Assembly (NCBI RefSeq): GCF_021869535.1
Contig: NW_026262690.1
Coordinates: 83,142,001 to 83,206,000, forward strand
DNA: 64,000 nucleotides
Direction of reading: 5' to 3'
Source of the DNA: Mytilus californianus
Lineage: Eukaryota
How positions within the stretch are numbered: the first letter of the stretch is position 1; each line of letters opens with the position of its first letter. A program made the translations under genes and the position numbers. Below the pieces are notes generated by a model. The model saw only the letters and a program-made list of their open reading frames with translations. It was not told the DNA's origin and did not search any database. Of this stretch, positions 1 through 18,869 are shown in pieces.

Positions 1-522
1 TGGTTTTTTTTTACTCAGAAGGATAAACTTTAAAAACTAACTGGAATTTGAATACAAAAGAGATAGCTCACACTGTCGATTTGATAACAATTTCACATAT
101 AGTCGTTGTTTCAGAATGCTATTCGGTACTATACATTGTTGTTATAGGCAGTTTTGAAACAGCAATGCCAAATTTACAGTTTTCGTGAAATTTGGCATTG
201 AAGGACATTCTAAACCAACTTAAATGTATTTGTATTTGAAATATAAAACATGGTTTTACTTCCAATATAATTTAGGTTTTGGTGAAGAATGGCCTCCTTG
301 TTTATTTTTGTGTGAAATCCTTAATTGTACTATACCATTCTAACAAACATTTTCACATATCAACAGACCCATACAAATATACAACGAAAATCAAATGATG
401 CTCTTTTTGGTTAACCGTCAACTGTACACATGAATTGTGTCATGTCTTATCGCATCATAAGATAATTTAGTCGAGAAGACTGATCTAGTCACGCTTACAT
501 CAGATCATCATCGAAAGTCAAA

Positions 523-1482
523 ATGAAGGGTTGTCTAGCTCTTCTTTGTCTCCTTCCAATCTGTCTATCGGCTCCACTATCTGGTAAGCACATAAAATCT
601 ATATAATGAAGAGAATTTAAAGTTTGAATAGGATTTTCGTTTTGTGAAAATACAAGCCTTGGGTTTCGAATAACTTAGTAAAACTTCATGTTATTAAGAA
701 AGGCAGTCTGTAACTATAAACTTATTTAAAATTTGGAATACAAGTACTAATATTCAAGCAATATTATATTATAAAGTGTCCATACATACTGCTTATTATT
801 GGAGGGAGCGGTCTTTTAAATGATTGTCATTAGAGCAAAAGACGATTGGCTCGTGGTAATATTTCTGATTTCTTACCTCTCATAAATCTATTTGGAATAC
901 ACTACATATAAATTTTACGATTTCCTACTAAGAGACTTCCAGACTAAAGATAAAAGAAACATACAACTTGTTCGTAAAGATGCAATTATTTCAAACTAGT
1001 TTGTAAAATATGGTATTGTGAAAAAATATTTTTACAATGTATTATTGATTGTATAAATATATTCCGATTTAGATGGGACTTTTGACCCGAACGCTCTAAA
1101 CAAGGATTTTGGTACTGGTGGTTTCGCCGGCAGTGGTGGATTTGGAACTGGCACAGGTGGTAGTTTTAATCCAAACGCTTTGAACCAAAACTTCGGAGGA
1201 GGTGGATTCGGCTCCATGTCAACATTTGCCGCATCGACTGTTGCTCCTTCTGGGACAACTGAAACATTTGATCCTAATAAAGTAAACAACTTCGGTAGCG
1301 GAACTGGATTTGGAGGAAGTGGTTTCGGTACAGGAAGTGGAAGTGGAACTGGAGGTTTTGGTTCCGGAACTGGTTTCGGTAGTGGTGGAAGTGGAACTGG
1401 TACCTTTGACCCGAATAAACTTAATGGTGGTACTGGAAGTGGTACCTTTGATCCAAATAAGCTCAATAGTTTTGGAAAATAA
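523..1482 (+). CDS. Secreted Gly/Ser/Thr/Phe-rich FDPN-repeat protein 1 (156 aa, 2 exons: 523-583, 1073-1482)
   Basis: Exon 1 reads MKGCLALLCLLPICLSAPLS+G then gtaag at 584. The acceptor tttag ends at 1072. The phase-1 join gives ...APLSDGTFDPNALNKDFG..., in frame with track ORF 1180-1482. Five F[DN]PN motifs; ends NSFGK*; AATAAA at the stop. Confidence 0.88.
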
Positions 1483-1869
1483 ATAAATTAAAGTCATTGT
1501 TGTTACATATACATTTAAGATTATTTCATTTTTAAAGTTTGATTAGTTATAATATATTTAACAAGAGGTCATCGACATAAAGTTATGTAGTTCACAAATC
1601 AAAAATGAACTGACACACACCCGTTTTAGTTTAGAAACGCTATGGAAAGAATAACAAGTGTAACAACAGGGTAGGCTTCTCAAGATGAAATAACACCATT
1701 AGACTTTTGTTTTCGTGCTTGGTTGCTGTGTGTCGTGTTTGTTTTTCGTTTATTGTTTTGTCATAAAAAGGTTCAGGATATTTAATATAGCTAGCTTATT
1801 CCGTCTAATTTTTTTTTAGAGAAATGAACGCATGTTATATTCAAACTCATCACAGATACCAAAATTAAC

Positions 1870-2475
1870 ATTTTGTACGACAGATGCGCGTTTCGTCTAC
1901 AAAGACTCATCAGTGACGCTCGAATCAAAAATGTTAAAAAGGCTAAATAAAGTACGAAATTGAAGAGCATTGGAGACCCAAAATTCCGAAAGGTTTTTCC
2001 AAATACAGCTTAGTTAATGTTTTGTTAACAGTTTATTTATGATTATGACCATATCAAAGATAAATTTTCAAGTCAACACAGAAGTGCTGACTTCTGGGCT
2101 GGTGATATCCTTGGGAAGGAAACCTCCAACAGCAGTGGCATCCACCCATTGATGATCATTGATTCTAAATAAACTCATCATAGATTTCAGGATTGAAATT
2201 TTGTACGCCAGACGCACGTTCCAAATAAAGTAGCATCGAGGACCCCAAATTCCGAAAGGTTTTGCCAAATACATCTAAGGTAATCTATTCCTGGGGTAGA
2301 AAATCTTTAGTATTTCCTAAAATTCAAATTTGTAATAACAGTTAATTTATAATAATGACCATATCAATGATCATTTAGAAGTGCTGACTACTGGGATGGT
2401 GATACCCTCGGAGAGGATACATTCACCAGCAAAGGCATCGACCCAGTGGTTGAAAATAAAACTCATCATAGTATG
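1870..2475 (+). repeat. Interspersed repeat family C, two tandem degenerate copies
   Basis: The motif gactcatcagtgacgctcgaa..gaagagcattg..gacccaaaattccgaaaggttt..ctgactNctgggctggtgat recurs at about 14665, 15390 and 42690, and inverted at 4245-4400 and 35150-35565. Confidence 0.7.
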
Positions 2476-2669
2476 AGACCTTTTGTCAGCTTCCAAGTAA
2501 AACAAATTGGTTAAAATTAAACGTCGCACGGAGTGGCAGATTTCTCATCGAGGGGATGAGACATTTATTGGAAAAGATTAGTTTGCCTACAAGTCTGTCT
2601 CAAACTCTGTTCTTAATGGAAACAAGCTAATTTTAAATCAAAATGTGAATAACACATATCGTTACATTA

Positions 2670-3425
2670 TTAAACAAGATGAAATGCTATTGATTACTAA
2701 TGACCCCCCCCCCCCCCTCCATTATAAGTGTTCAAAACATAGGATTTGAATGAGCACTGGTTATAACACCACCTCACATAATATGATCGTATGAAGCGTG
2801 ATACCAGGAAGTTCTGATTTGTAGTTCATGAGAAAATTATGACGAACTATTCATATGAAGGCTATCATGTGAAAGAATTTAAAAGTATTTGGTAAACAAG
2901 AAGTTGATGAGCAGTGGTTGTCAAAACTCCCCATGTCGTATAGCATTCACAGAAAATTGGCACCCCTCCCCCCCCCCCCAAAAAAAAAAAAGAGTCCATG
3001 CTTTGGTATGGAAAACCCCAAAAATAATTAGAACCAAAAATTAGAATGGAAAATGCACATTATGTGGTAAAGGTTCTGAGAAAGTCTTATTAAATTACGA
3101 CGAGGGATTTTGGAGCAAAAGCGGATATAAATGTGTACTAAAGTGGCAAATAAGAAAAAGTCCCTGTCATCACAAAGCAAACCCATGAAAGCATTCAAAT
3201 GAAGAAATGAAATAGGATATGTAATTTACATCATGTCAGTAAGTTTCTGTGACAGTTTCACAAAATTTTGACATGCAGTTCTGGAACAGTTGTGGATATA
3301 AAAGTGTGATAGAAGAACGAACGAACGAACGGACGGACGGACGGACGGACGGAAGGACAAACGAACAAACTAACAGATGAACGCTCTCCCCGAACACTAT
3401 ATACAGCCCGCTTAAGCAAGCAGGA
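2670..3425 (+). mobile_element. HINE/pearl-like non-autonomous element (degenerate)
   Basis: Starts aaacaag, contains poly-C tracts and an (ACGA)n(ACGG)n microsatellite at about 3315-3360, and has an imperfect 3' hairpin. The layout matches better-preserved copies elsewhere in the window. Confidence 0.5.
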
Positions 3426-4709
3426 TTATGGTAAAAGAAAAGATGAAAAGGTATGACAAGACAGGAGAATTATGTCATTTTCCTGTAATTTCTGAGTCTA
3501 ATGGTCGTAATGAGGTAAAAAGTAGGTCAACTGAAACAAAATTCATTCTACATCTGTAATTAATAATGAAAACTATTCAATCTCAAATATAAGTACAATA
3601 TTGCAGCTGAAAACTGTCATTGCCATGAAATTATTATGTCGCGGGTAGCAGGGCCATAACTAAGTCACAGTAGGTTGATTATACCAAAACACATATAGGT
3701 AGTATATGTATGAGCCTCCTCATGGGATTTTTGATTATGTGATTACTTGGCCGTTTTTATAGTGATTATTTGATTACCAGACCAACTATTTCATGATTGT
3801 TTGATTATTTGATAATCTAGGACTGTATTTTTTATTATTTGATTATCTAATTTAAAAAAATAATTAATGATTATGTGATTATATTGGCAAAAAAATTGTG
3901 ATAACTTGGACACCCCCATGAGGGGCCTCATGTATATTGTAACTACAAGTATATATAATTTAAAATTAAAAACAAAACATGAATAACCATTAAAAATTAC
4001 TATTTTGTCGCGTTTTATCACAAGTCAGTCTAGCTAGCGTCAGTCTATTCATAGTAACGGTGGTAAAGAGTGTTTGCTTGTGGTATCATAGGTTGCAATT
4101 TTAAAAATAGACCAAACCATGATGATACTTTGAAAATGGTGGCAGGTATACGAATGAATTTCACAAGACAAATACTATGAGTGATGACTCATTACCTTAA
4201 ATATGGTCTCTTCAGCTACAAAATGAAAATAACTTTATAAAGTGTGTGCGTCCGAGGCGCTTTTCTTGATTTACCTTCATCAGGAACCCCCAAACCTAAA
4301 TATTTCAAAGCTAGGCCTGTATAAATATAAATACTAGAAACTATAGAAGCTATCTGACCAAAAGGGACCAGTCCCCTAATATAATAGCTAATTTATCTAA
4401 GATGAAGTTTGTCTGTGGGAGTTGGAACCCTTAGTTTCTTTATATTTTTTATTTGTCAAGAGGGTTTTAGAACAGTTATAATACGTATTTAGAACAAACT
4501 GTTAAAATAATAAGAACTGGGCATTTAGTAATGCATATCAAATGAAATTTAAAAATACAACAGGTTTCATATAATCTTTAATAACGACTGATAAAAGACA
4601 AAAATAACAAATAATTTAATGTGTTGAACACGTGTCTGACTGCGACCTGATGATAATCTCTCTGTCTTATCTGGCAAACGTACCAGCAGGTGGAATTCAA
4701 CGACGAGAC

Positions 4710-6358
4710 ATGTTTGCTAAAATGAATATGTTAATATTATTAACTGTTTTTATTCCAACATGTTATTGTGGTAAGATTATATTTTCTTTATTAAATGCAC
4801 AAACACAACAATAGAAATATGTTAAAGGGTTCAAATTCATGATCGATTCCCTAAAAGGTTGGTATTTAGTTATTACGTTTTCGATCATAGGCGAAATGTT
4901 GGAAAAGGGTGGGGGGGGGGGGGTTGATTTCACTGATTATACCTTCTTGTCGATCTTTAAAATAAGCCTAATAGGTTATATTCATTGACAAGCTGTTTTT
5001 AAAATAGATTTCATCAATTTTTTTCTTAATTTTGATAGATCAGTAAACCCAATGCTTTTTTTAATATTAGCTGGTCGAACCCACCATCTAAAATCAAAAT
5101 CTTCGGAAACTGCCATTAACAAGTCAAGAATATGACAGTTGTTTCCAATTCGTTCCGTTGGTTGATAAAGTCACACGTTTGATTTTGTCAGATATTATGG
5201 ACTTGCCCTAATTTTAATTTATCTTGAAGTTCCGAATTTTTGTTATAACTTTTTATCAATTGGTCTAACGGCTAAGTGTTTTCTTTTTTCTGGATCTTCG
5301 ATTTTCTTAAATTGTTTTGGGGTTAGTATATTTGTAGCTTCTTATTCCTTTACATTTTTGAAAATGGTCATTTCTCTTCAGGTAAGCCGAAACTCAGAGA
5401 AATAAAAAAAGAAAGCCACCAGAAATAAAAGTTCGATTATCAAATGCAGGCTTAACTATGCATGTTTCTTTTCAAAAAGCGCTGAAAAAACATGTTGTTT
5501 TCTTGATCATTTGTCTCTTTTAAATAGTCTTGAATTATGCTTTTGTTTTGCCTGTCATTTTTTTAAACAGTGCTTAATCGAATTTTAATGCTATATGTGT
5601 TTGTAACGTGCATTTTGATTTGATAACACTTATATTTCAGGGCATCAATTCCACGATTGATGGTATGAAATTGTTCATGATTTTACAATTATGTTTTCTT
5701 TCAGCTGCATATAATTGAGGTACAGTATTTCATTTGAAGATTTGCGGACATCAATTTTTGATATGAAAGTTGCAAATATCCGATAACTTTCACAGCTTAC
5801 TTTGGAAGTTGCAAATATCTGATAACTTACGCAGCTTACTACATGTCACCTCCATTTCAGACAGCCATGCAGTTTTTGCTCGCTTATCTTAAAATACAAA
5901 ACTACAAATAGCTGTGGCATATGATTTTTTCTCCAAAATATCATCTAAAAACGAAAAATAACAAACTACTTTTAAGTACTTGTTATAAGGTAGAGTTAAC
6001 TTTTTTTTGTAATTCTATCCATATACTGTAATATACTATTTTTCTATTTGTAGCTTCCTTGAGCTTATTCAATGCAAATGGCACAGCAAGTTTCAATCCT
6101 AGTCAGATGTCAGCTGGTCAGTTTAGTCCAAACTCTGGAGCTGGAACATTTGACCCAAATAAATTAGGAGCTGGATCCTTCAACCCTAATAGTCTTGGAT
6201 CAGGAAGTTTTAATCCAAACAGTGTCGGATCCGGAAGCTTTAATCCAAACTCTATGGGAGCGGGATCGTTCTCTCCAAATAGTATGGGATCAGGCACATT
6301 CGATCCGAACAAGGCCCCATCTGCAAACTTTGATCCAAATAAGTTTGGAAAGAAATAA
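4710..6358 (+). CDS. Secreted FxPN decapeptide-repeat protein 2 (121 aa, 2 exons: 4710-4770, 6054-6358)
   Basis: Exon 1 reads MFAKMNMLILLTVFIPTCYC+G then gtaag at 4771. The acceptor tttgtag ends at 6053. The phase-1 join gives ...CYCASLSLFNANG..., in frame with ORF 6059-6358. Nine FxP[NS] motifs, mostly at 10-aa period; ends FDPNKFGKK*. Confidence 0.88.
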
Positions 6359-6964
6359 AAGCATAACATATCATTTGCAATGATGTTTCTTTTATTAACG
6401 GTATACGGTAACGGTATATTTCAATCATGGAGTTAAATCCCTCGGTCATTATTGTATGTTTAAGAAACCTGCCATGTTTAGTAGATGAGATCTTACGAAC
6501 TATTTTCTGCATAAAATCACACTAGGGAAACAATCAAAATCTAAAATTGAATATTTTTACAACTAAAATCAATTGACCATGTACATGGCAAATATCTTAC
6601 GATTTAAAGAAAAGGATTTTCGTATGCCTTACATGCGTTTTAAGGTAGTTTCAATACATTTATTCCAAATGGTGAAATTTTTTTTTTAATTGTTCTTGGT
6701 TTCACCAAATCATACATATTTCTTACACTTACAATAATGTACCATTTTTATAGATATCAACTTCTAAAATCAATTATCTTAAATCGGATTTTGAGTTAAA
6801 TGTCGCTGATCTCTATTCTTTCCTCCCATCCTCCCTCCCCAAAACTTTTTACTTATATCAGATCTGACAAAGAATATATCTGAAATACGTGAGTAAATAG
6901 GACACGATTCCAGAAAAAATCTTAACATCTCAATCTTAACTGAATTAGACTTATCATCGAATTT

Positions 6965-7535
6965 GTACTAACACGAGCAACACAACGGGTGTCACATGTG
7001 GAGCAAGATCTGCTTACCATTTAGGAGCACCTGATGTCATCCCTTGTTTTGTTTAAAAGGGCCTCGTGTTTCTCTTGCTTTAATTTTGAGTGATGTTCTT
7101 TGTGTTTTTTTAATTTTTCAATGTCTTTGTTGTTTCTACTGGTCACAATCTTTTCTATCCTACTGTCTTGAAAAACCTGTTACAATTTCACATTTGGCAA
7201 AGATTCAGGGTTAGAAAATTTACATGACCGATGGTTTACGAATTTAACGATGTCTTTGGGGCTAGATAAAATCAATTAATTCACTATTGCGTGATGCCTT
7301 ATCTCTTGATATAACTTATCACTATGTTTTATAGGAGTTACACGACAGTTGTCACATGTGGAACAGGAGCTTTTGCTAACCCTTCCGGAGCAACTGGGGA
7401 TTTTTGGCAGTGTTCGTATTGCTCAGTCTTCAGTGTTCTATTTTCTGTTTTGTAGACTGTTGTCGTTTTTCGTTTTTTACCATGGCATTGTCAGTTTATC
7501 TTCTACTTAAGAGTTTTGATATCCCTTAAGTGTCT
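6965..7535 (+). repeat. Interspersed repeat family D (two copies; third at 20480-20715)
   Basis: Shared text gtcacatgtggagcaggatctgcttacccttccggagcacctga..gtgttcgt[ag]ttgctcagtcttc..ccatggc[ag]ttgtca at about 6990, 7350 and 20495. Confidence 0.7.
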
Positions 7536-8818
7536 TTCTTATCTCGTTAACAGCTGCCAATACGGCGTCGATATCGGTCATTCGGTATATCGAGAAAATT
7601 ATCGTGAAAGAATAAGTAATAGTGGTAAAGCATTGCGAATGGATCGTGAAAGATCTGGTATAGGATTGTGAATGAAATCTTATCGAGAAGACACATGCAA
7701 CGTCAGTAAAAAATCTAATTTAATCAATTATAATGACAAATATTGGAAAAATAAAACTGTCTGTCAAATTGGTTCAACATTATGATCAGTATACGAGAAA
7801 AATCAATTCTTAAAGTACACCGTTTTTGCAAAACTACAAAAGGCTGATTGCTCATCGAAATTTCAGAGAAATTAAAATGTAAACAAACATGATTTTTTTT
7901 TCAAATTTTTCATAGAGGCCCCAAAAAAGACAAGTGTAAAACCATTCAAACAGGAAAACCCGGTCTAATCTATATAAAAAACGAGAATGAGACACACTTA
8001 TGAACCACATCAACAAACGACAACCACTGAACATCAGGTTCCTGACTTATGACAGGTGCAAACAAATGCAGCGGGTTTAAACGTTTTAATAGGCGCCAAC
8101 CTTCACCCTACCTTAAACAATAGTGTTACATCACAACATAGAAAGACACACTGTAAAATATCAATTGAAATGGCTTAACTCAATCAAAAGACATATTAAC
8201 AAAAACACGTGAACATACACTGAACGAATAAATTTGATCTATGACACAATGTAAATACAAAATTAATAAAGCAAGGGGGTTAGATGTAAAACAATATCAG
8301 AAAGACGATCATAACCGTTACCTTGGACAAAATGCCGCCCAATAAAATAACGTACACAGGTAAATAAAAATAAGTTTGTTGTAAGGTATACAGTCATGGA
8401 GTACGAAAATAAATTTTACAAAATAAATAATTTTGTTGTTCCTAGTACGAGAACAAAAGTGAAAATTTATCGTCATACTAAACACTTAACAAAGATGGTA
8501 TATATTAAAAATAGTGAGACTAGATATAACACTGAATAAGTAAACATTAAATAACAAAAATACATTACACATTGTATCAACAGGTCAAATTAACACGAAA
8601 ATACGATTTGAGAGTACTCGCAGTTTAAAAGTAAAAAAAAATTAATAATAAAAAAATCATGCATCAGAGACTAAAATCAACTAAAACACATCCCAGGGAT
8701 TTAGTGTTTTAACGTCATGGACAGTCAAGGAAGACATGACTTGTGCAAAGCCAAAATAAATGTATCGACAGGCAGTAGGATAGTTAGGAGTTAACCTGTT
8801 AATAAATATGTATAATGT

Positions 8819-8850
8819 AATATATATATATATATATAGATAGATAGAGT
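8819..8850. repeat. (TA)n/(TAGA)n microsatellite
   Basis: Directly visible tatatatatatatatatatagatagatag. Confidence 0.9.
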
Positions 8851-10224
8851 AATCTCTATATAGAAAATGAACGTGGATGTGTATTTATACATCCCAAAAA
8901 TACGTTTGAAAAGAATACAAATTTAGTTATGTTTTAATTTGCTGATGACAAAATCGATATTTGTGCCAAGGTAAACTATATTAAAAGATCTAATTACAAC
9001 ATTGGTAAGATAACCTTTATTAATAAGTTTGTTTAAAGGTTCATACATAAACTACTTTTCTCTTAAAAATATCGTTCAATATTACTATTTGAAATAGTTT
9101 TTAAATTTATTTTGATTTAGTCTAATCAAAAACTTTGCAAAAATGGTAATATTTGTAAAAAAATTATATTCCGGATCGTGAAAGATCGAGTACCGTATTT
9201 TGATGATCGTGAAAAGGATCGTGAAAGATCTGTTGCCTCTTATTCGTTATTGCACGAAAACGAACAAATCTGTCTTTAAACAAACGATAATTTATATTGG
9301 TCACATTCCAATATATCATGACATATTTGAAACTTAATCTTTATGGTGTCAGATAGTCCAGTAAAATATTTTTTTTGTAATTTATATATATATATATATA
9401 CAAGTCTAAATTGAAAACAACGTTCAAACCTATGATTGCGTTGGGTAAAAACAGCAATTTTAAGAGTGAAAAAATATATTTTAACAAAACGCATTTGACT
9501 AACAGGTCGAACAACTGATGTTCTTAAACCCTGCTGTTTGCCATTGACGATTGCCAAACAAATTGATCACAAGGTGTAACAAAATGGATCTCTATATTAA
9601 TTTAATACCAAGTAGAAAACAATAAACTTGCGGCAAAGATGGTAAACCACAACATGAGGTGCTAAATTTTTTACACCATATCCGGATTTCGACAATTAAT
9701 GTCTCTTCAGTGATGTTAGGGATCGAAAAGTATTTGGAAGGCCATTTAATTTACCTCAATTTAGGATAGACTCTTGAATTTTAAAGAGTCAAAATAGGAT
9801 GAACGGATTATATAAACCGGAGGGAAAATATAATACAAGCCCAAACGAAATAAATATAAACAAGTCTAAATTGAAAAAAACGTTCAAACCTATGATATAT
9901 ATATCCATATTTAGACCTGTTTTCATTTAAGAGACAATGCTACATGTAACTAGGCATCCAAGATAATAAGACCTCCAGGAGTGTAAATTGTCGAAAAGTA
10001 AATATCTTTGTATATGCATATAATGGTAAATGCATCCACGAATAAATGAAGCGAGAGGAGGTCTGGTCTTCCGCTGAAAATATCTTTATGTGTACGTTTT
10101 TGTTTTTGTAAAGAGTAAGGCAAAGAAGCTATCTCATTTGATTTTACATACATGTGTATCGAAGATGTTCTTTTCATTAACAATACAAATTTTCAGTCTG
10201 ATTGGGTCCAATAAATAGTCATGA

Positions 10225-10570
10225 ACCAGAGATTACAGACACCACATTTACAGCTTCCGTGGCCTCATTTTGGACATATACCCCTATTTTGACTACAGCG
10301 GTCATCTCAATACCAGCGTCATTGACAAACGAGATGATTTCAATTATGAAAATTAATTATAATTTTTCCTCATCTTAGCAGATTTACCTACTTCATCAGC
10401 GTATGGAGTATATATTTCTCAGTTCATATGATTTTCAGGAGCTTGCATCTGCAACTCAGAGTTTGTAAAATGCTTTCATTGCATGAGCAAAAATTAATGA
10501 ACCAGGGTTTGGTGAAAGAACGTCTTGTAACGAGTTTCAAAGTTGTGTGCACGATTTTTCAAATTAGTGC
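10225..10570 (+). pseudogene. Decayed reverse transcriptase fragment (Penelope-like type, C-terminal part)
   Basis: Frameshifted translation gives EITDTT..., DKRDDF, AYGVYISQF, KLMNQG. These are the same blocks as the longer relic at 46790-47690. Confidence 0.65.
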
Positions 10571-11009
10571 GCACCAGATTAAATCTCCGGTAAACGAAAA
10601 TATTTATATTTACATGACACTTAAGGTGCTCCGTAATTATGCTTTACCATACTGACTGTACTATCAACTACAAACACATTTTGTTGGTGTCTTTGTTTGA
10701 TCTAATTGTTAATTTAGTGTGTTTGAACGTTTAATTCAGCTGTGTTGTATATCTGTGGTGTATGTTTACACAATTTTGACTGCTGGATCCCAGATATGGC
10801 CACGTTAACCAATTAAGTCTATGTGGGTTGCTCACCTAATTTGGTAATATAACCATTAAAGATACAAAACGTGATTTTTTCTTAATGGTTCGCTAGGATT
10901 TTGTCGCCTTTTGTGTTTTCTTAAAAAGTACTTGGTGCATAGTATTATTAAAGAAGTTGAATCATTTTGACAGACATATATTTTTTTTCTAATTTGTTGT
11001 TCCACCTTA

Positions 11010-11442
11010 TAATTACATTACATGTATGTTTCATTATAATACGTTATTTTGATTGTCTAACAGCAATCTCGCGTCTGAAATGCACTTTGGTCAACGCTTT
11101 TTGTAAATTTATTGGGGTGTAAAAGCGTTGACCGAAGTACATTTTGTATGAAGCGCGGAAGCGCTTCATTCTAAAAATGTGCGCACGGTCAACTCTTTTA
11201 CAACCCTATGAAATTACTAAAAGAAGCATTCAATACTTCAATTACATTTTTTTGCTAGGATCATGAAAACACGATTTCTATCAAGTTTTTCTTTTATTTA
11301 CCTGTGCACTTTATTGTAGAAGCTCGTGTCGTTACATTTCATTTTGAAATTTTGAAATGAAGGTTAATTTCAGAATGACGCGAGATTGCTGTTAGCCAAT
11401 CAAAATAACGTATTATAATGAAACATACATGTAATGTAATTA
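11010..11442. mobile_element. MITE with ~66-bp terminal inverted repeats and internal palindromes
   Basis: taattacattacatgtatgtttcattataatacgttattttgattg[t/g]ctaacagcaatctcgcgtc at 11010-11075 is inverted at 11378-11442 with one mismatch. Internal inverted aaaagcgttgacc/ggtcaacgctttt blocks. Confidence 0.85.
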
Positions 11443-12801
11443 TTTCTTAAATGAAAATACAGTAGATTTTTCATAGATTTTGAAGTAGAATTACACTTAA
11501 TTGCTTTCACGAACCAATCGCAATGATTGACCACGGCACCGTTAATTATTCTTTCACGATCATTTTTCTCAATATACGGATTGACACCCGTGATATGGTA
11601 TCCCTTAAGAAAAGATTAATCTTAAAATGAAAATACTCGAAAGTCATGAACATTTCAGTACATATTATAATCAACTTTAGTGGTGAGATCGGAGTATCGC
11701 TGGTGTTATTGCTCCCGGTAATCTAGACAATTTTAAAATAAAATAAAAAGAGAGTAATCGATTTTGCAACACTTTTCGTTAGAATAACGCGGAATACAGG
11801 TTGTCAATTAAACTCCATTTAACGTCAAATATGAATCAAATTACAATCGTTGTTATAATTTTAATTTGGGCTTTTAATTAATTATGATATTTTCTCTACC
11901 TAAAACGAAATATTTAAAAGTATAAAAGGTTTAAACATTAAAGGTTTCATCACAATTGAATATCTATGAGGTGTAATTTGGGTTATAATTCTCATACAAT
12001 TATCTAAATAATTATTATGTATTATGAAGTCATTTATAATACAGTTTAATAGTGTATGCATAAAGCATGTATGCATTCTATAGAAATCTTTTTTTTTACA
12101 ATAGGAAGTTAAAAAATGACAATAACACTTTCTAAATTTGGTGCGTGTGAATTGCTTTCAAGAAGTTGAAATAATCATAAAAGATGATTTCTTTTTATTA
12201 CAGCGGATGACTTAGGTTGGGCCTCGATGGTGCAGATTGTGAAGAAGGAATCCGGTCTAGATTATCCCGACTAAAAAAGCTTCTACTTCTAATTTGAAAA
12301 TGGGTTCATAGACCAAAATGTTGTGTTTAGCACCAGTGCTGCCAAAAGCTTAGCTAGAAGTCTACAATGCACAGGTGTAGCTTTATCGAGAGAAAAAAGC
12401 AAAAGATTCCTCCGTACTGCCTACTGGTGCTAAGGACAATCTTTAAATTTCAGCGCAGTGTATGCTTTGATGAGTGTTGAAAACCTCATTGTTAACTTAA
12501 CATGAAAAACAACAATGAAAGCTTCTGGGTGTGCCGAGTATGTTTAGCGATTTTGCATCATGGATTTATACACCATATCCCTTCTTTTCCGTTCTAAATT
12601 TGGAACGAAAATTTCTGACGACCTTAGATAACCGATTTAACTTACTTTTTTTCAAATGCACGACATGGAAGTTGAAATATAAATGAATGATATTATAGAC
12701 CACTAGGCCAGCAGCTTTGACAGCTGCAAAGATTATTTTACAACCATTAAAGATACTAGTATTTTCATGTTTTTACTATTGTTCCTGGATAGACTTGAAA
12801 G

Positions 12802-15161
12802 ATGTCGTCTTATGTAATGCTCCTACTTTTGCTTTCTGTGGTAATGGGAAGACCATCTATAGGTAGGTGGATATTATTTTAAGCATTTTTTACTCCTACA
12901 TTCTATTGATTACAGACTAAATCTCATATTGTTTAGGGCTGTCAGAGACTCTAACTATTATGAATAAATGTTTCTTTTGTCAAAGTATATGTGGTGTTAA
13001 AAAAAAACTAAACACTGTTATGCAATACTTTCCCATATACCCACAACAGAAAACTAGAGGCTCTAAAAGAGCCTGTGTCGCTCACTTTGGTCTATATGCA
13101 TATTCAACAAATGACACTCTCCAACATTGTAGGCGATAATAGGATTCATGACAAAAATCTCTGTTTTGTTGATCTTGTATTGCTGATCATTTACTCCGTT
13201 TAGTTTCTCTCTATCTTTAGTTTTTGCTCAAAACACAAAAGAGGGTAAAACAAAATCCTAAATTAAGGGCAATCACTCCTATAAAGAGTTACAGTCTACT
13301 AACTCTATCGGCAAAATTTGACGTGTTAGTAGATCATGTCTTGCTAATGTATTTTGCTTATTAAAGTTTATATCTATCTATTATAATTTTTATCATATAA
13401 GGGACAACGCAAAAAAAACAATATGGTAAAAATCATCATTAAAGGGCAATAACTCCAATAAGGAGTCATCGGACGATTTCCACCATATTGTATTACTAGT
13501 AATTGTAGATCTTGTCTTGCTGATCATTTTTGCCTATTTAAGTTCCTATCTATCTATTATAATTTTTAAGATATAAGGCAAAACGCAAAAATTTGGTAAA
13601 AATTTGTCATCAAAGGGCCATAACTCTAATAAGGAGTCGACTGACGATTTCATTCAATAGACAAATTTTTAGAACATGTCTAGCTAATCAGTTTTGCATT
13701 TTAAAGTTTCTCTCTATCTATTATAGTTTTTTCAAGATAAAAGGCAAAAATGAAAAAAATGGTAAAATTTGTGAATTAAGGACAATAACTCCTATAAGAA
13801 ATCGTCTGACAGTTTTGACATAAATGGACAATAGGTAGAGCTCAACATTCTGAACATTTTTGCCTTGTCAGATATTCTTTATTTATAACGGTTTTCAAAA
13901 TAATAGACAAAACTTGCATTTTACCCCTACGTTCTATTTTTAGCCATCTTGGTTGGCGAGCGGGATCATCGGACACATTTTTTAAATTAGAAACCTCAAT
14001 GATGATTGTGGCCAAGTTTGATTAAATTTGGCCCAATAGTTTCAGAGGAGAAGACTTTTGTAAAAGTTAACGAGGACGACGACGGAGACGACGACGGACG
14101 ACGACTGACGACGGACACTGACGACGGACGCCAAGTCATGGGAAAAGCTCACTTGGCCTTTTAGGCCAGGTGAGCTAAAAATGGTTGCAGATTCACACTA
14201 TGATGAATTAAGGCAAAATGTTTTTACCTACTGAATAAAAGCCTACAAACTATTGTTTCATTTTTGAAATACATAAACATACAAAACACATACACATACA
14301 CAAAAGAAAACACAACATAAGAAGCAAAAATATATAGCAATATAAAATTTCCAGAAAAGTATTTTAGTAGCAAATTTGAATTGCAACTGTAATTTCCTCT
14401 TTAACTTCAATTAGCAAAAGGCTTGAATTAGCAGAGTGGTGAATAAACCAAATGAAAATACAGCATCTTTGTATCAATGTTAATAGTTCCTCTGTACAAA
14501 AATCTGTCAATGGTAATACTTATAATTTGACCATCTTTGCATTCTTGGAAATAACACAAGATAAAAGTAATACGATATTTGAATATACATCTACCATTAT
14601 CAAACTGTTTATTATAGTAAGAACTCGTCACAGGTACCATGTTTAAATCATGTATTCCAACACGCATTTCGTCTACACAAGACTCATTAGTGTCGCTCTA
14701 ATCAAAATCAATCTATTGATTTCGACATGTGGCAACTTGGCTTAAAATAACCAATCGGAGAAACAAAAAAAGTCCAATAAAATAAAGTATTTAATGTTTT
14801 TTTCACAGAAAAAAGACAGACTTCCAACACTAATCAACAGCTATCACCAGACCAGTTTATCAATCCCAATTTTACATCCAGTGGAACTAATTTTCAACCA
14901 CAGCAATTCGTGAATCCATCATTTCAACAGAATGGCAACAACACCAACCCAAATTTCATGCCAAGTTTCATCGATCCTTCACAGTTCTTGAAAGGAACCG
15001 GAGGTACAGGTAGTGGTAGTTCATCTGGGAACAGTTCATCTACTTCCGGTGGAATTTTTTCTCCTCAGCAGTTTATCAATCCTTTCAGTTCTGGTGGAAA
15101 TTCTTCAAGTTTTAGCTTTATTGACCCCGGAAAGTTTATCGGAAAAAGGACAGTTAAGTGA
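12802..15161 (+). CDS. Secreted Gln/Asn/Ser-rich F[IV][ND]P-repeat prepropeptide 3 (137 aa, 2 exons: 12802-12862, 14809-15161)
   Basis: Exon 1 reads MSSYVMLLLLLSVVMGRPSI+G then gtaggt at 12863. The acceptor ttttcacag ends at 14808. The join gives RPSIEKR|QTSNTNQQ..., in frame with ORF 14910-15161. Ends FIDPGKFIGKRTVK*. Confidence 0.82.
13090..14181 (+). mobile_element. HINE/pearl-like element inside the intron of secreted gene 3
   Basis: A 5' gctcac subterminal motif, 3-4 degenerate ~170-bp tandem units (aagggcaataactcc..), a (GAC/GACG)n microsatellite at about 14075-14130, and a 3' hairpin agctcacttggcc-tttta-ggccaggtgagct followed by aaaaa. Confidence 0.75.
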
Positions 15162-16452
15162 TAACGTTCAATCGTATGTCATAAAAACGCTAAATACTGA
15201 ACTCTGTCTTATTACTGACTGATATCAAAATTTTAAAGTAATCTTTTTCATAAATTAAGCCATAATGAATTAAACAAAGGGACTAGACGAGATTTTCGTT
15301 CAAGTGGTCATTGTGAACCTCCGGATAGCACAGATGTATAGGAACACACATATTTACTTCGATTCAAAAACTCATAAAAAATACCTTATGAGTTTGTTAC
15401 GCCAGATGCGTGTTTTGTCTACAAAGGACTCATCAGTGACACTCGAATAAAACAACAATAAAAGTCCAAATAAAGTATGAACATTGAATTAGGGGATTGA
15501 TTTCAGAAGTTAGATTTCCAACCAACATCTGCACCTACCTCAGCTAGTTTCCTGTAGTAGCGACCCTGCATTCCAAATTATGTGCCGCGTTTTATTTCCT
15601 TGTTCATGCTAGTGGTCATCCTGTTGGCAGCTGCACTGTGGAGGTTTTTCATTATGTGCTTTAGTTTTATGACATATGGTATAGATAGCCTTTTTGCATA
15701 CGTTAAACTAGTTTAACCCCACCAATAGTGTGCCTGTGCCAATTCAGGCTATCATAGACCATGTGTTCTTCAAAGATGTTTGTCTTGGTTTGTAAATCTG
15801 GGTTTTTGTCGTCGGAGTCGGGTGCTGGTGGTTGATGTGAGCTGTCGTACTGTGTGGTATTTTTGGCGATTCCTGTTATCCTCATAATGTTTATGTTTGA
15901 TGTAGTTTGGTTGCTGCTTCATTCACGTATAACCCTATTTTTTTTTTATTCATTTTCAACAATCAAATAATCTAATAATAGTATTAAAATATAAGAAATG
16001 CCAACCCTTTTCAATGAAATTATCTAAGTTGTCTTTATTCTTCTTACCACAACTAGTCTTCTTAACAATAAAACATGATCGCATTTGCACACAAAGAAAT
16101 GTGAAAGAGAAAACAAGTCAAGTAGCACGCGAGTAACAAGAAAAAAACAACCAGAGATACAACTTACGGGTTTCAACAATAGACAAATGTGAATGCAATA
16201 TGTCATTCCTTTCCGAGTCAGGATTTTTTTAAATAAATATTTTTACTGGATTTTTTTTTAATTTAAAAAGAAAAATTGCAATTAAATTGTTGCTGTGTAA
16301 ACCAAATTATATCTTCATGTCGTGAAAGGTCATCTATCAGTTATCTATATTATTAGTGTCATACGTCCAAGATTAAGGTTCCGTGGGATGACAGATGTTT
16401 CGTTAATATAATTTAAGACAAAGTTTAAAATTGTTCACCCTCTTTTATCACC

Positions 16453-18869
16453 ATGAAGACGGCTACATTTGTACTGCTGGTAGTATGTACCGTGCAGGGA
16501 TCTCCAGTTTATAGAGGTGAGTCTTCGTACATTTATTGCTGACGACAACATAAAAATAGTGCTGATATTAAATTGTCCAGTCTTTCAGATGCATTAGTCA
16601 ATGCTTCTTGTATTGTCTAGTTATGGATGATATATAAAAGGAGATCTAGTGTATATGTCGATGAGATAAAAACACAACCAAACAAACACAACCGACGTTG
16701 TTTTACTTAGTTTGGGGTCGTAAGTCATTATTTATTGCCATTTCACTGGACTGAGACATCGGCCTTTTCGAACTACATGTATTTGGAACTTGCGTCTATG
16801 ATGAAAATGGTATAAAAGCTTTATGGGTGCAAGATACCTCACAATCATTTACAGAATCGGCAAGGTTTAAGTAAAAGCTAAATATCCATTTGGAAAATTT
16901 ATATTATTTAAAGTTAAAATTGTTTTTAGACTATGTAAGACCATTAAGTCTGTGCCTTTTAGACACTATAAGACTATTCTAAGTATTTCCGTTCCTTTCA
17001 GACTGTGTAAGACTTTTTCGTATTACCGTTCCTTTTGTTCCTTTCAGACTGTGTAAGACTTTTTCGTATTACCGTTCCTTTTATTATATGTCAAAATGTT
17101 TAATAATATCTTTCCTTGCAGAATATGTAAGGCGAGCAAGTAGTCTCGGAAACTTCGACCCAAATGCCCTGTATCAACAACAGTCACAGTCGGCACAATC
17201 GTACCTGAAGGGTTCCGGAAGTGTAGCATCTCCTGGTGGATCTGTGCAGACAGGAGGGTCAAGTAGTGGATCTACGGGTAGTTTTGATCCAAATGCTTTA
17301 TTCAAACAGCAATCACAACAAACAAGTCAGGCATTATCAAGTAGTTCACAGCAATCATCTGGTAGTTCATCAGGTCAACAGTCAAGTGGAGGAAGTGCAA
17401 CTTTTGACCCGAACGCTGTTAATACAATGACATCACAACAAAAGTCCCCACAAACGATGAGTGGACAACAGTCTGGTAGTGGTTCAACTGGAACATTTGA
17501 CCCAAATGCCCTGAACAGTAAGATACCTCAGCAACAGCAAAGTGGTGGAGCACAACCGCAAAGTTCTGGTGGATCACAACAGTCAGGGAGTGGTTCAACT
17601 GGAACATTTGACCCAAATGCCCTGAACAGTAAGATACCTAAGCAACAGCAAAGTGCTGGAGCTGGTGGAGCACAACCGCAAAGCTCTGGTGGATCACAAC
17701 AGGCAGGAAGTGGATCAACTGGAACATTTAATCCGAATGCCATGAACAGTCAGATGTCTCAGCAACAGCAAAGTGCTGGTGGTGGTGGAGCACAACCGCA
17801 AAGTTCTAGTGGAGGTGGAATGTCTTCGGGTAGTGGTGGATTCAATCCTTCAGCTTTGAACAATCAAATGTTACAACAGAATCTGAAACAAATAGCCAAC
17901 AGTAAACCAACTGGCAGTAGCAGCTCTATGTCTGGAGGCAGTAATTCCATGGGAGGAGGCAGTAGTTCAATGGGAGGAGGCAGCAGTTCTATGGGTGGAG
18001 GAAGTAGTTCTATGGGCAGTGGCGGAAGTAGTTCTATGGGCAGTGGCGGTAGTAGTTCTATGGGCAGTGGCGGTAGTAGTTCTATGGGCAGTGGCGGTAG
18101 TAGTTCTATGGGTAGTGGTGGTAGTAGTTCAATGGGTAGTGGCGGTAGTGGTGGTAGTAGTTCTATGGGCAGTGGCGGTAGTAGCTCCATGGGCAGTGGC
18201 AGCAGTTCTATGAGTGGTGGTTCAAGTGGAGGATCAGGAGGGTTTGATCCAAATGCACTTAACAGTCCAGATAAAAATAAGATTGATCCGTCAATGTTTA
18301 TGAGTGGTGGAACAAATGCTCTAGCAAATAAGATGAGTGGAGGCTCTGGTGGAAGTTCTAGCAGTGGATCACAAATGAGTTCAGGTGGTTCACAGATGGG
18401 TTCGGGTGGTTCACAAATGGGTTCAGGTAGTTCACAGATGGGCTCTGGAGGATCACAGATGGGTTCAGGTGGTTCCCAAATGGGTTCAGGTAGTTCACAG
18501 ATGGGATCAGGTGGTTCACAGACGAGTTCTGGAGGATCACAAATGGGTTCTGGAGGGTCACAGATGGGATCAGGAAGTTCACAGATGAGTTCAGGTGGTT
18601 CTGGTGGTTCATCAAGCAGTAGCTCTCAGAGTGGAAGTTCAGGTGGTTCTGGTGGTTCATCAAGCAGTAGCTCTCAGAGTGGAAGTTCCGGCGGTGGATC
18701 GTCAGGAAGTTTTGACCCAAATAAGCTGAACCAGCAGATGATGTCTCAATCAAATATGATGAACCCATCTCAGTTTATGAGTGGAACAAATGCAGGTGCT
18801 TCTTCCGGGTCAATGGGAAAAGGACTTCAGTACAATCTGTTCAATCCAAATCAATTTGTTGGAAAATAA
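16453..18869 (+). CDS. Large secreted Gly/Ser/Gln/Met-rich FDPN-repeat protein 4 (603 aa, 2 exons: 16453-16516, 17122-18869)
   Basis: Exon 1 reads MKTATFVLLVVCTVQGSPVYR+G then gtgagt at 16517. The acceptor tttccttgcag ends at 17121. The join gives SPVYREYVRR|ASSLGNFDPN..., in frame with ORF 17088-18869. Ten F[DN]P[NS] motifs; ends FNPNQFVGK*. Confidence 0.9.

What the first reader, a model, noticed from the sequence alone, without database searches (positions are those of the whole stretch)
523..18869. Four-gene tandem cluster of unrecognised secreted low-complexity F-[D/N]-P-[N/S] repeat proteins
Seen: four same-strand genes spliced by hand (156, 121, 137 and 603 aa). Each has a signal peptide and a mature chain made of Gly/Ser/Asn/Gln/Thr spacers, punctuated by F[DNS]P[NS] or F[IV][ND]P motifs (5, 9, 5 and 10 copies). 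The mature chains lack Cys and have almost no Tyr or acidic clusters. Established: DOPA-type mussel foot proteins are Tyr/Lys-rich, and acidic shell proteins are Asp-rich, so neither fits. Inference: this is a divergent paralog family with a sticker-and-spacer design (Phe-Pro-Asn turns as stickers) that could coacervate or self-assemble into an extracellular material (mucus, egg coat, periostracum/ligament, byssus component). It could alternatively act as Gly-rich defence peptides. I recognise no described family.
Basis: partly seen in the sequence, partly recalled or inferred. Interest (0 to 1): 0.88.

Follow-up and report, generated by a model that had tools for sequence, protein, structure and literature searches.

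The report
Bivalve secreted Phe-Asp-Pro-Asn repeat protein cluster
Four neighbouring genes encode secreted, floppy repeat proteins of a bivalve-only family that nobody has named; the same gene cluster is present in oysters and pearl oysters, and its job is still unknown.

Summary
All four two-exon models reproduce exactly (156, 121, 137 and 603 aa). Each has a signal peptide in exon 1 and a phase-1 GT..AG intron. Motif counts of 5/9/5/10 compare with 0.15 or fewer in shuffles. RNA contigs from a related organism confirm the g1 and g2 junctions. Twelve of 14 listed exon differences are synonymous. The g3 and g4 junctions were not tested.

The genes belong to an unnamed, bivalve-restricted family: no Pfam match, and only 13 hits among 1.84 billion representative proteins. 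The few annotated members are misnamed (keratin, hnRNP A1, a GPCR). The cluster is syntenic in Magallana gigas, Crassostrea virginica and Pinctada imbricata.

New here:
- The unifying motif is Φ-[DN]-P-[NS]-x-Φ.
- Every family member ends Φ-Gly-(Lys/Arg)0-3, an amidation-type signal.
- Many members begin [KR]R|Gln, a convertase site that would expose a pyroglutamate-forming Gln.

AlphaFold models are disordered apart from short helical turns after D-P-N.

The best reading is convertase- and amidation-processed, end-capped, nearly uncharged disordered polypeptides that self-associate through Phe stickers. The material, tissue and modifications remain untested. The family fails the tests for DOPA foot proteins, abductin and classical neuropeptide precursors. 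The same scan noted the amidation signal separately on this stretch.

The parts
523..583 (+). g1 exon 1 (coding part): start codon and signal peptide MKGCLALLCLLPICLS
   Evidence: An RNA contig (X3 record 17) covers 508-582 and continues at 1072.
1073..1482 (+). g1 exon 2: Gly/Thr/Ser/Phe-rich chain with 5 FDPN/FNPN motifs and 10 FG dipeptides, ending NSFGK-stop. AATAAA at 1482-1487 overlaps the stop codon.
   Evidence: The RNA contig runs to 1492. All 9 listed differences to the RNA contigs are synonymous, and the one indel is an in-frame 6-nt deletion. Orthologues exist in oysters, Pinctada and Dreissena.
4710..4770 (+). g2 exon 1 (coding part): signal peptide. In-frame alternative ATGs lie at 4722 and 4728.
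   Evidence: The joint 4769->6053 (GT..AG) is seen in RNA contigs of runs X1 and X3.
6054..6358 (+). g2 exon 2: about nine decapeptide-like units (G-S-G-S-F-N-P-N-S-L/M/V), ending NFDPNKFGKK-stop
   Evidence: 41% identity over the full length, E=1e-25, to the M. gigas gene next to the g1 orthologue. 72% identity to P0012.
12802..12862 (+). g3 exon 1 (coding part): signal peptide MSSYVMLLLLLSVVMG plus the start of a short pro-segment
   Evidence: The junction was not tested with reads.
14809..15161 (+). g3 exon 2: begins (E)KR|Q, carries five F[IV][ND]P motifs, and ends FIDPGKFI-GKR-TVK-stop
   Evidence: Oyster g3-like units have the same plan, but BLAST similarity is not significant.
16453..16516 (+). 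g4 exon 1 (coding part): signal peptide MKTATFVLLVVCTVQG
   Evidence: The junction was not tested with reads. An unspliced alternative start at 17088 is not excluded.
17122..18869 (+). g4 exon 2: begins EYVRR|ASS, has 10 FDPN-type motifs in a Ser/Gly/Gln/Met-rich chain, and ends NLFNPNQFVGK-stop
   Evidence: Non-repeat anchor segments are conserved with the M. gigas 548-aa gene.
17465..17813 (+). g4 repeat block 1: 120-nt (40-aa) units, about 2.8 copies, each carrying one FDPNALNSKIP motif
17934..18212 (+). g4 repeat block 2: 24-nt (8-aa) GSGGSSSM units, about 9 copies
18364..18695 (+). g4 repeat blocks 3 and 4: 21-nt (7-aa) GSGGSQM units x 11.3, then 48-nt units x 2.2
446..465 (+). Two GATA-type sites in opposite orientation (CTTATC at 446-451, AGATAA at 460-465) upstream of g1. 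Similar sites start at 4589, 4651 and 4667 (g2) and at 16334, 16341 and 16445 (g4).
   Evidence: This is a lead for shared regulation, not a demonstrated element.

Best explanation
This is a tandem cluster of four paralogous genes of an old, bivalve-restricted, so far unnamed family of secreted, intrinsically disordered repeat proteins.

Each gene has a signal-peptide exon, a phase-1 intron and one body exon. The body is a nearly uncharged Gly/Ser/Asn/Gln/Thr (in g4 also Met) chain. It is punctuated by a short motif, hydrophobic-[Asp/Asn]-Pro-[Asn/Ser]-x-hydrophobic, which AlphaFold2 models as a short helical turn.

Inferred processing: the proteins pass through a regulated secretory route. 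A convertase removes a short N-terminal pro-piece (KR|Q in g3, RR|A in g4). The terminal Gly-Lys/Arg is trimmed and converted to a C-terminal amide on the last hydrophobic residue of the last motif. The released chains would therefore be end-capped and carry almost no charge.

Inferred action: the Phe-containing motifs (plus FG dipeptides in g1) act as weak cohesive stickers between flexible spacers. At high concentration the chains would condense into a gel-like or granule-packed extracellular material. The tissue and the material are not known.
For: Shown:
- Gene models and motifs.
- Spliced transcripts for g1 and g2.
- Purifying selection: 12 of 14 listed exon differences to RNA contigs are synonymous, and the one indel is in frame.
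- Family restricted to bivalve-type sequences: 13 hits at E<=1e-3 among 1.84e9 representatives, no Pfam family, relatives unnamed or misnamed.
- Synteny. M. gigas and C. virginica carry g1-like and g2-like genes adjacent on one strand, a g4-like gene, and g3-like units (read in M. gigas only) within 20 kb. Pinctada carries g1-like, a second FG/FDPN gene and g2-like ORFs.
- Every family member read in five species ends hydrophobic-Gly-(K/R)0-3, either at the stop or before a short tail.
- [KR]R|Q sits at the start of the body exon in g3, oyster g2-like and g3-like genes and a C. virginica FG gene. Dreissena has signal peptide|Q.
- Predicted disorder, pLDDT 54-55, with helical turns only after D-P-N.
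- g1 and g2 contigs are present together in three RNA runs and both absent from a fourth.

Inferred: cohesion of uncharged Phe-rich disordered chains, by analogy with FG-repeat domains (established knowledge). The protein-atlas feature search also listed nucleoporin FG clusters, but at non-significant scores.
Against: No tissue, proteomic or biochemical evidence for any material. The family is not among Pinctada insoluble nacre, prism or ligament proteins or Perna viridis shell proteins.

Amidation, pyroglutamate and convertase cleavage are read from sequence only. g1 and g2 of this window lack the N-terminal dibasic site.

g2, g3 and g4 have few or no FG dipeptides, and Phe is only 2% of g4, so cohesion may be weak there. 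The many Ser-Gly pairs could instead carry glycans, which would change the physics entirely.

g3's kinship rests on architecture and motif, not on significant alignment. The g3 and g4 splice junctions are unverified.
Confidence: 0.5

Rival explanations
1. Precursors of bioactive signalling polypeptides (hormone, neuropeptide or pheromone-like). The conserved end signals yield pGlu- and amide-capped ligands whose C-terminal [DN]-P-x-x-hydrophobic-amide is the receptor-binding end. The low-complexity part is a spacer or carrier.
For: C-terminal hydrophobic-Gly-basic endings are conserved in all members across five species, and [KR]R|Q starts are frequent. g4 and its oyster orthologue end NP[NS]QF[VI]-G-basic, which recalls the P-x-F-V/I-amide ends of Mytilus inhibitory peptides (my own knowledge). 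Earlier scan notes report other prohormone-like genes 27-39 kb upstream (unchecked).
Against: g1, g2 and g4 have no internal dibasic sites, so the products would be 100-580 residues long, far larger than typical neuropeptides. The motif is repeated 5-10 times along the chain rather than only at the end. Synonymous-only change along the g1 spacers suggests the whole chain matters. g1/g2 transcripts assemble in 17 listed RNA runs from five studies, which is more than expected for a ganglion-restricted peptide, although the tissues are coded and unknown. The P-to-F spacing differs from the Mytilus inhibitory peptides.
Confidence: 0.17
2. Glycine-rich, C-terminally amidated host-defence polypeptides, comparable to arthropod glycine-rich antimicrobial proteins.
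For: Signal peptide, Gly-rich chain of about 100-140 residues and an amidation-type end in g1-g3. Such a design is known from spider and isopod Gly-rich antimicrobial peptides (my own knowledge, not tested here).
Against: Net charge is -2, +2, +3 and +7 over 586 residues, so the chains are not cationic. They have no His or Trp and no amphipathic segment. Orthologues are conserved one-to-one with synteny from oysters to this species, unlike the fast turnover usual for bivalve antimicrobial families.
Confidence: 0.08
3. Core proteins of secreted or granule proteoglycans and mucin-like glycoproteins. The many Ser-Gly and Ser/Thr runs carry glycans, and the FDPN motifs are docking or spacing elements.
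For: Long (S-G)n and GSGGSSSM / GSGGSQM runs in g1, g4 and the orthologues. Small size and a signal peptide, as in serglycin-type cores (my own knowledge). In Dreissena the next gene downstream is a polypeptide GalNAc-transferase-type gene, which may be coincidence.
Against: Few acidic residues lie near the Ser-Gly pairs, and the spacers lack Pro, unlike typical mucin domains. No glycan data exist. g2 has almost no such runs yet is the best conserved member.
Confidence: 0.15
4. Hinge-ligament or shell-framework elastomer proteins related to abductin or to Met-rich ligament proteins.
For: g1 and its orthologues contain GGFGG-type stretches and are about the size of abductin. g4 and its oyster orthologue have Gly/Ser/Met repeats. 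Ligament proteins are Gly- and Met-rich (abductin description in PMC9999432; PMC7591529).
Against: g1 is 30% Gly, 5% Pro and has a single Met, against 58% Gly, 1% Pro and high Met in abductin, and it has no GGFGGMGGGX decapeptide. None of the 13 profile-search hits whose sequences were read shows the abductin-type repeat. No family motif occurs in the sequences of Pinctada insoluble ligament, nacre and prism proteins or in the Perna shell proteome files.
Confidence: 0.1

Closest known systems
Uncharacterised bivalve proteins XP_022329287 (Crassostrea virginica LOC111128120), XP_011413369 (Magallana gigas), KAH3845421 (Dreissena polymorpha), KAK3089162 (Pinctada imbricata)
   Same: True homologues of g1: signal peptide, FDPN[AKS] motifs, GGFG spacers and a terminal F-G-[KR][KR]. 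Identity is 41-53%. They sit in the same gene neighbourhood in the oysters and Pinctada.
   Different: They carry no functional annotation. Their database names (keratin type II-like, hnRNP A1, glycoprotein-hormone GPCR) are composition artefacts. The oyster genes have an extra intron in the body.
Abductin (scallop hinge-ligament elastomer)
   Same: A small secreted bivalve protein that is Gly- and Phe-rich, disordered, and contains GGFGG-type elements (PMC9999432).
   Different: Abductin is about 58% Gly and 1% Pro, is Met-rich and is built of GGFGGMGGGX decapeptides. g1-g4 have 12-30% Gly, 4-10% Pro and the D/N-P-N/S motif. None of the profile-search hits read shows the abductin-type repeat.
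Cohesive FG-repeat domains of nucleoporins
   Same: Uncharged, Asn/Gln/Ser/Thr/Gly-rich disordered chains in which Phe is almost the only hydrophobic residue. g1 has 10 FG dipeptides. This is a works-like analogy for gel formation.
   Different: FG nucleoporins are intracellular, have no signal peptide and are not homologous. The atlas similarity score was 0.61, which is not significant. g2-g4 have at most one FG dipeptide.
Prohormone and neuropeptide precursors, e.g. Mytilus inhibitory peptide (P-x-F-V/I-amide) precursors
   Same: Signal peptide, dibasic cleavage sites, Gln after the cleavage site, and a C-terminal Gly-basic amidation signal after a hydrophobic residue.
   Different: There are no multiple short peptide copies flanked by dibasic sites, so the products would be 100-580 residues long. 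The P-to-F spacing differs by one residue.
Repetitive low-complexity secreted proteins of molluscan mantle secretomes (shematrin/KRMP type)
   Same: Lineage-restricted, tandemly duplicated, repeat-rich secreted proteins with short basic C-termini (my own knowledge).
   Different: Those are Gly/Tyr-rich, evolve fast and are shell-bound. This family has no Tyr, is conserved with synteny across distant bivalves, and was not found in the shell proteomes checked.

Membership tests
DOPA-type mussel foot proteins | Tyr- (DOPA-) and Lys-rich repeats | tested here: not met
   Tyr counts are 0, 0, 0 and 5. Lys is 4-5% in g1-g3 and about 2% in g4.
Acidic shell matrix proteins | Asp-rich or acidic blocks | tested here: not met
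   D+E is 7, 3, 4 and 10 residues with no clusters. Net charge is -2 to +7.
Abductin | GGFGGMGGGX decapeptide repeats, about 58% Gly, about 1% Pro, high Met (PMC9999432) | tested here: not met
   g1 is 30% Gly, 5% Pro and has one Met. No such decapeptide is present. None of the 13 profile hits read looks like abductin.
Neuropeptide / prohormone precursor | Signal peptide | tested here: met
   N-terminal hydrophobic segments with small residues at the predicted cleavage site. No dedicated signal-peptide predictor was available.
Neuropeptide / prohormone precursor | C-terminal Gly followed by basic residue(s) as an amidation signal | tested here: met
   FGK, FGKK, IGKR-TVK and VGK in g1-g4. The same holds in all orthologues read. 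This is sequence level only; the modification itself was not tested.
Neuropeptide / prohormone precursor | Several short peptide copies, each flanked by dibasic sites | tested here: not met
   g1, g2 and g4 have no internal dibasic sites beyond the N-terminal RR of g4. g3 has them only at its two ends.
Mytilus inhibitory peptide type (P-x-F-V/I-amide) | C-terminal Pro-x-Phe-Val/Ile-Gly | tested here: not met
   g4 ends P-N-Q-F-V-G-K and g3 ends P-G-K-F-I-G-K-R, with two residues between Pro and Phe. The family definition comes from my own knowledge.
FG-nucleoporin cohesive domains (analogy only) | FG dipeptides in uncharged polar disordered sequence, located at the nuclear pore | tested here: not met
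   The composition criterion is met by g1 only (10 FG). All four have signal peptides, so location and homology fail.
Glycine-rich amidated antimicrobial polypeptides | Cationic net charge | tested here: not met
   Net charge is -2, +2, +3 and +7 over 586 residues.
Any Pfam family | Score above the gathering threshold | tested here: not met
   The only hits are PMG (20.3 bits against a cut-off of 29) and Decapeptide (18.8 against 45), both on g2.
Pentapeptide-repeat beta-helix | Contiguous five-residue repeats that fold into a beta-helix | tested here: not met
   In g2, Phe and Leu alternate every five residues. However, there is no Pfam pentapeptide hit and the AlphaFold2 model is disordered: pLDDT 54, pTM 0.15, no strands.
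Unnamed bivalve hydrophobic-[DN]-P-[NS]-x-hydrophobic secreted protein family (defined here) | Signal-peptide exon, phase-1 intron, repeated motif in an uncharged low-complexity chain, ending hydrophobic-Gly-(K/R)0-3, and located in the conserved cluster | tested here: met
   g1, g2 and g4 meet all features and have significant or anchored orthologues. g3 meets the architectural features, but its alignment is not significant.

The most novel reading that the evidence does not exclude
The cluster encodes an extracellular counterpart of FG-nucleoporin cohesive domains. These would be uncharged Phe-sticker disordered chains, capped by pyroglutamate and a C-terminal amide so that no terminal charge disturbs the last motif. 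They would condense into a selective hydrogel or elastic gel used by all bivalves, for example a mucus, crystalline-style or ligament matrix. The cluster would have been kept together, possibly under a shared GATA-type promoter logic, since before oysters, pearl oysters and this lineage diverged.
Probability: 0.2. Interest if true: 0.8.

Novelty: new variant of a known kind. Interest (0 to 1): 0.58.

Why it matters
Bivalve genomes hold many lineage-specific secreted low-complexity proteins. Most evolve fast and have no traceable orthologues. This family keeps a short linear motif, its exon plan, its end-processing signals and its gene neighbourhood across distant bivalves, with relatives in oysters, pearl oysters and zebra mussel. 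That implies a conserved and probably basic function that nobody has assigned.

Databases currently label the few annotated members as keratin, hnRNP A1 or a GPCR, and those names will mislead expression studies.

If the proteins do form a material, they would be a Tyr-free, charge-free, Phe-based design. That differs from DOPA adhesives, abductin and silk-like matrices, and it would be of interest for biomaterials. If they are ligands instead, they would be unusually large amidated polypeptides.

Either way, the motif definition and the orthologue set given here make the question testable.

Tried and rejected
- Pfam scan of all four body exons: nothing above threshold.
- Protein-atlas feature search with g1: best score 0.68, bacterial hypotheticals and nucleoporin FG clusters, not significant.
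- Word-indexed homology search with the first 270 residues of the g4 body exon: nothing.
- Paper searches for the orthologues' accession numbers and for the motif strings: nothing relevant.
- General searches on glycine-rich amidated bivalve proteins, crystalline style and low-complexity secretomes: no description of this family.
- Supplementary sequences searched for the family's motifs: Pinctada insoluble shell and ligament proteins, Perna viridis shell proteome and shipworm style study. There were no members, only single chance matches in unrelated proteins.
- Pentapeptide-repeat beta-helix idea for g2: rejected by the disordered model.
- DNA alignment of the four upstream regions and signal exons: no alignable similarity, so the duplications are old.
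- Identifying the source organism. Exact look-up of a 585-aa window ORF found nothing. Metagenome contigs carrying the g2 relative P0012 are only 69% identical in the exon and unalignable outside it.
- A raw-read RNA run of the second coded organism showed no reads on g1 or g2 exons. It neither supported nor refuted the models.
- Dreissena locus: no second family member within 10 kb on either side.

Full report
**1. The observation**

Reading the sequence and splicing at the stated junctions gives open frames of exactly 156, 121, 137 and 603 residues. The coding parts are:
- g1: 523-583 + 1073-1482
- g2: 4710-4770 + 6054-6358
- g3: 12802-12862 + 14809-15161
- g4: 16453-16516 + 17122-18869

All four donors are GT, and all four acceptors are AG after a pyrimidine run. 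All four introns split a codon after its first base (phase 1). Each exon 1 encodes little more than a hydrophobic signal-type segment.

The motif counts of 5, 9, 5 and 10 are reproduced. Shuffling each mature chain 5000 times gave means of 0.04-0.15 motifs and never reached the observed number. Across all six frames of the 64-kb window, F[DN]PN occurs 20 times, always inside the body exons of g1, g2 and g4. The mature chains have no Cys. Tyr counts are 0, 0, 0 and 5, and net charge is -2 to +7. The window has no N.

**2. Are they real genes?**

In RNA-run contigs of a closely related organism or allele (about 97% identity), one contig covers 508-582 and continues at 1072-1492. Contigs in two runs join 4769 to 6053 with GT..AG ends. 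The g1 and g2 junctions are therefore confirmed.

The g1 transcript ends about 10 nt after the stop, where AATAAA overlaps the stop codon.

Of the 15 base differences to these contigs listed inside the exons, all 9 in g1 are synonymous. Two adjacent ones jointly turn TCC into AGC, Ser to Ser, so the 15 bases make 14 events. In g2, 4 of 6 are synonymous. The one indel is an in-frame 6-nt deletion in a GSGSGT spacer. Twelve synonymous events out of 14 argues for purifying selection on the protein, spacers included. Only the best-supported differences are listed by the tool.

A raw-read RNA run of another coded organism had no reads on the exons, so expression is not ubiquitous. The g3 and g4 junctions remain untested. 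For g4 an unspliced start at 17088 cannot be excluded. The two-exon model does fit the family pattern, and the oyster orthologue aligns from just after the predicted acceptor.

**3. What family?**

Pfam gives nothing above threshold.
- A word-indexed search with g1 found four bivalve proteins at E of 1e-7 to 2e-4: Crassostrea virginica XP_022329287, Magallana gigas XP_011413369, Dreissena polymorpha KAH3845421 and Pinctada imbricata KAK3089162.
- All have a signal peptide, FDPN[AKS] motifs, GGFG spacers and a terminal F-G-[KR][KR].
- Their database names (keratin type II-like, hnRNP A1, glycoprotein-hormone GPCR) are composition artefacts.
- A profile of these sequences run against every one of 1.84 billion representative proteins returned only 13 hits at E<=1e-3. 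These were the same proteins plus unnamed exon-sized fragments with the same motifs. Nothing recognisable came from other molluscan classes or phyla.
- Paper searches by accession number and by motif found nothing.

I found no description of the family.

**4. Synteny**

Fetching the DNA around the orthologues showed that the cluster itself is conserved.

*Magallana gigas (L005):*
- The g1 orthologue is followed on the same strand by a 145-aa gene ending NFDPSTFGKK. It aligns to g2 over its full length (41% identity, E=1e-25).
- Within 10 kb lies a 548-aa gene with GGSSQMM repeats. Its non-repeat anchors match g4: FDPNAL[YF]QQQ..KG[ST]GSVASP at the start, FDPN..N.P..NKIDPS.FMS in the middle and NPSQF near the end.
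- Upstream are several g3-like units. Each begins [KR]RQ[ST]S and ends FFNPQ..[VL]G[KR]R. They contain both FINP-type and FDPN-type motifs, which links the g3 motif to that of the others.
- A 978-aa gene with F[ND]P..[VI]NN motifs also lies there.

*Other species:*
- C. virginica (L008) has the same order, plus an FG/SNP[MF]GG repeat gene that starts VRR|Q and ends VV-Gly.
- Pinctada (L007) has a 356-aa FG/FDPN gene, the g1 orthologue and g2-like ORFs ending FDPSVFG.
- Dreissena showed only the g1 orthologue within 10 kb on either side.

The four upstream regions in the window share no alignable DNA. The duplications are therefore old. g3's direct alignment to the oyster units is not significant, so its membership rests on architecture, motif and position.

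**5. Anatomy**

Collecting every [DN]-P-[NSDG] site in the four proteins gives 29 instances with one pattern:
- Position -1 is Phe in 22 and Ile, Val or Met in 6.
- Position 0 is Asp or Asn.
- Pro is invariant.
- Asn or Ser follows in 28.
- Position +4 is Leu, Phe, Met or Val in 26.

The unifying motif is thus hydrophobic-[DN]-P-[NS]-x-hydrophobic. It is usually preceded by G-[ST] and followed by Asn.

AlphaFold2 models of g2 and g1, built with their few homologues, are disordered: mean pLDDT 54 and 55, pTM 0.15. The only secondary structure is a set of short helical turns beginning at the P-N of the motifs. This rejects my idea that g2's five-residue Phe/Leu alternation forms a pentapeptide-repeat beta-helix.

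g4 is a mosaic of four tandem-repeat blocks with units of 120, 24, 21 and 48 nt.

**6. Processing signals**

Every family member read ends with a hydrophobic residue followed by Gly and zero to three basic residues, either at the stop or before a short tail:

| Ending | Where seen |
|---|---|
| FGK | g1 |
| FGKK | g2, oyster g1 and g2, P0012 |
| FGRK | Pinctada |
| FGRR | Dreissena |
| FG-stop | Pinctada g2-like, P0020 |
| IGKR-TVK | g3 |
| LGRR, VGRR-SEYL, VGKR-GKKIYL | oyster g3-like units |
| VGK | g4 |
| IGRKR-FVQ | oyster g4-like |

By established knowledge this is the substrate pattern for carboxypeptidase trimming and peptidylglycine alpha-amidation.

Many members also begin their body exon with [KR]R followed by Gln, or have Gln directly after the signal peptide. 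After convertase cleavage this pattern yields pyroglutamate. g3 has EKR|Q and g4 has VRR|A. g1 and g2 of this window have neither.

The protein ends exactly at the second hydrophobic position of a final motif copy. Amidation would therefore leave that last motif uncharged. This is inference; no modification was measured.

**7. How it most likely works**

*Shown:* a conserved, selected, transcribed (g1, g2) cluster of secreted disordered repeat proteins with prohormone-type end signals.

*Inferred:* the chains are packaged in a regulated secretory pathway and end-capped. Being nearly uncharged, with Phe as almost the only hydrophobic residue (12% in g1-g3, plus 10 FG dipeptides in g1), they would self-associate through their motifs. 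The outcome would be a gel or a condensed material.

Points bearing on the material:
- Byssus is unlikely as the common role, because oysters carry the family.
- Shell or ligament framework finds no support in the sequences of Pinctada insoluble nacre, prism and ligament proteins or in the Perna viridis shell proteome.
- These proteins have few Lys/Arg and would be largely missed by tryptic proteomics, so that absence is weak evidence.

Rivals:
- Large amidated signalling polypeptides. The end signals favour this. The absence of internal cleavage sites, the repeated motif and the selection along the spacers argue against it.
- Proteoglycan or mucin-like cores. The many Ser-Gly runs favour this; it is untested.
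- Glycine-rich defence polypeptides. The charge is wrong.
- Abductin-like elastomers. Composition and repeat differ from the published description.

**8. Regulation lead**

WGATAR sites are about twice as frequent in the 250 nt upstream of the start codons of 15 cluster genes in four species as in the window overall (28 sites against about 12 expected). Ten of the 15 have one between -99 and -126, against 7.8% of random positions. Several share the extended form (T)CTTATCT.

The distance window was chosen after looking, and the oyster pairs are not independent. This is a lead for co-regulation, not a result. In keeping with it, g1 and g2 contigs are present together in three RNA runs and both absent from a fourth. 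Those runs were selected for holding this stretch.

**9. Novelty and verdict**

'No described family' stands within the reach of the tools.

The kind of thing is known: lineage-restricted secreted low-complexity repeat proteins, and convertase/amidation processing. The combination appears undescribed. It comprises a Tyr-free, charge-free Phe-motif design, universal amidation-type ends on 100-600-residue chains, and a gene cluster conserved across distant bivalves.

Function remains open, so interest is moderate to high rather than very high. The same scan separately noted the amidation-type ends and the block structure of g4 on this stretch, and prohormone-like low-complexity genes 27-39 kb upstream. 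I confirmed the first two here and did not examine the upstream genes, which lie outside the window.

Noticed in passing
window 1682-2469, 3652-4045, 4243-4439, 5031-5227: Segments between g1 and g2 and inside the g2 intron attract very high depth in all four runs: summed contig word depth up to about 45,000, plus raw reads in X21. They show many rearranged joints and loose ends. They behave as high-copy interspersed repeats or transposable elements, not as part of the genes.
   Followed up: no
window 21576-22220 (-) and 39251-39964 (-): Two paralogous ORFs of 214 and 237 aa share the segment AAPP[IV]NNACLP.IY.KLD and the same C-terminus, DDAMTV. They look like a duplicated gene of unknown function unrelated to the cluster.
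   Followed up: no
window 27198-28955 (+): A 585-aa ORF rich in Lys, Ser and Asn, probably a disordered intracellular protein. Exact look-up found no recorded gene with this product.
   Followed up: partly
window 446-465, 4589-4672, 16334-16346; L005, L007, L008 upstream of cluster genes: GATA-type sites, often (T)CTTATCT, recur upstream of cluster genes in four species. Ten of 15 have one at -99 to -126 from the ATG, against 7.8% at random positions. The distance window was chosen after looking.
   Followed up: partly
L005 1460-3905 (-): The M. gigas annotation gives one 611-aa gene here. The DNA shows four body ORFs. Three begin [KR]RQ and end with Gly-dibasic, then a stop or a short tail. 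The fourth (3128-3493) begins CKRN and ends GRS. This looks more like a tandem array of g3-like two-exon genes fused by the annotation, or a polyprotein.
   Followed up: partly
L004 24258-30917 (+): In Dreissena the gene downstream of the g1 orthologue is a polypeptide GalNAc-transferase-type gene (Glycos_transf_2 plus Ricin_B_lectin). This may be coincidence, or it may be relevant if the family is O-glycosylated.
   Followed up: no
L005 13871-14919 (-), L008 13033-14073 (-): A conserved gene of 310-325 aa with no Pfam match and no family motif sits between the g2-like and g4-like genes in both oysters. It has no counterpart in the window between g2 and g4.
   Followed up: partly
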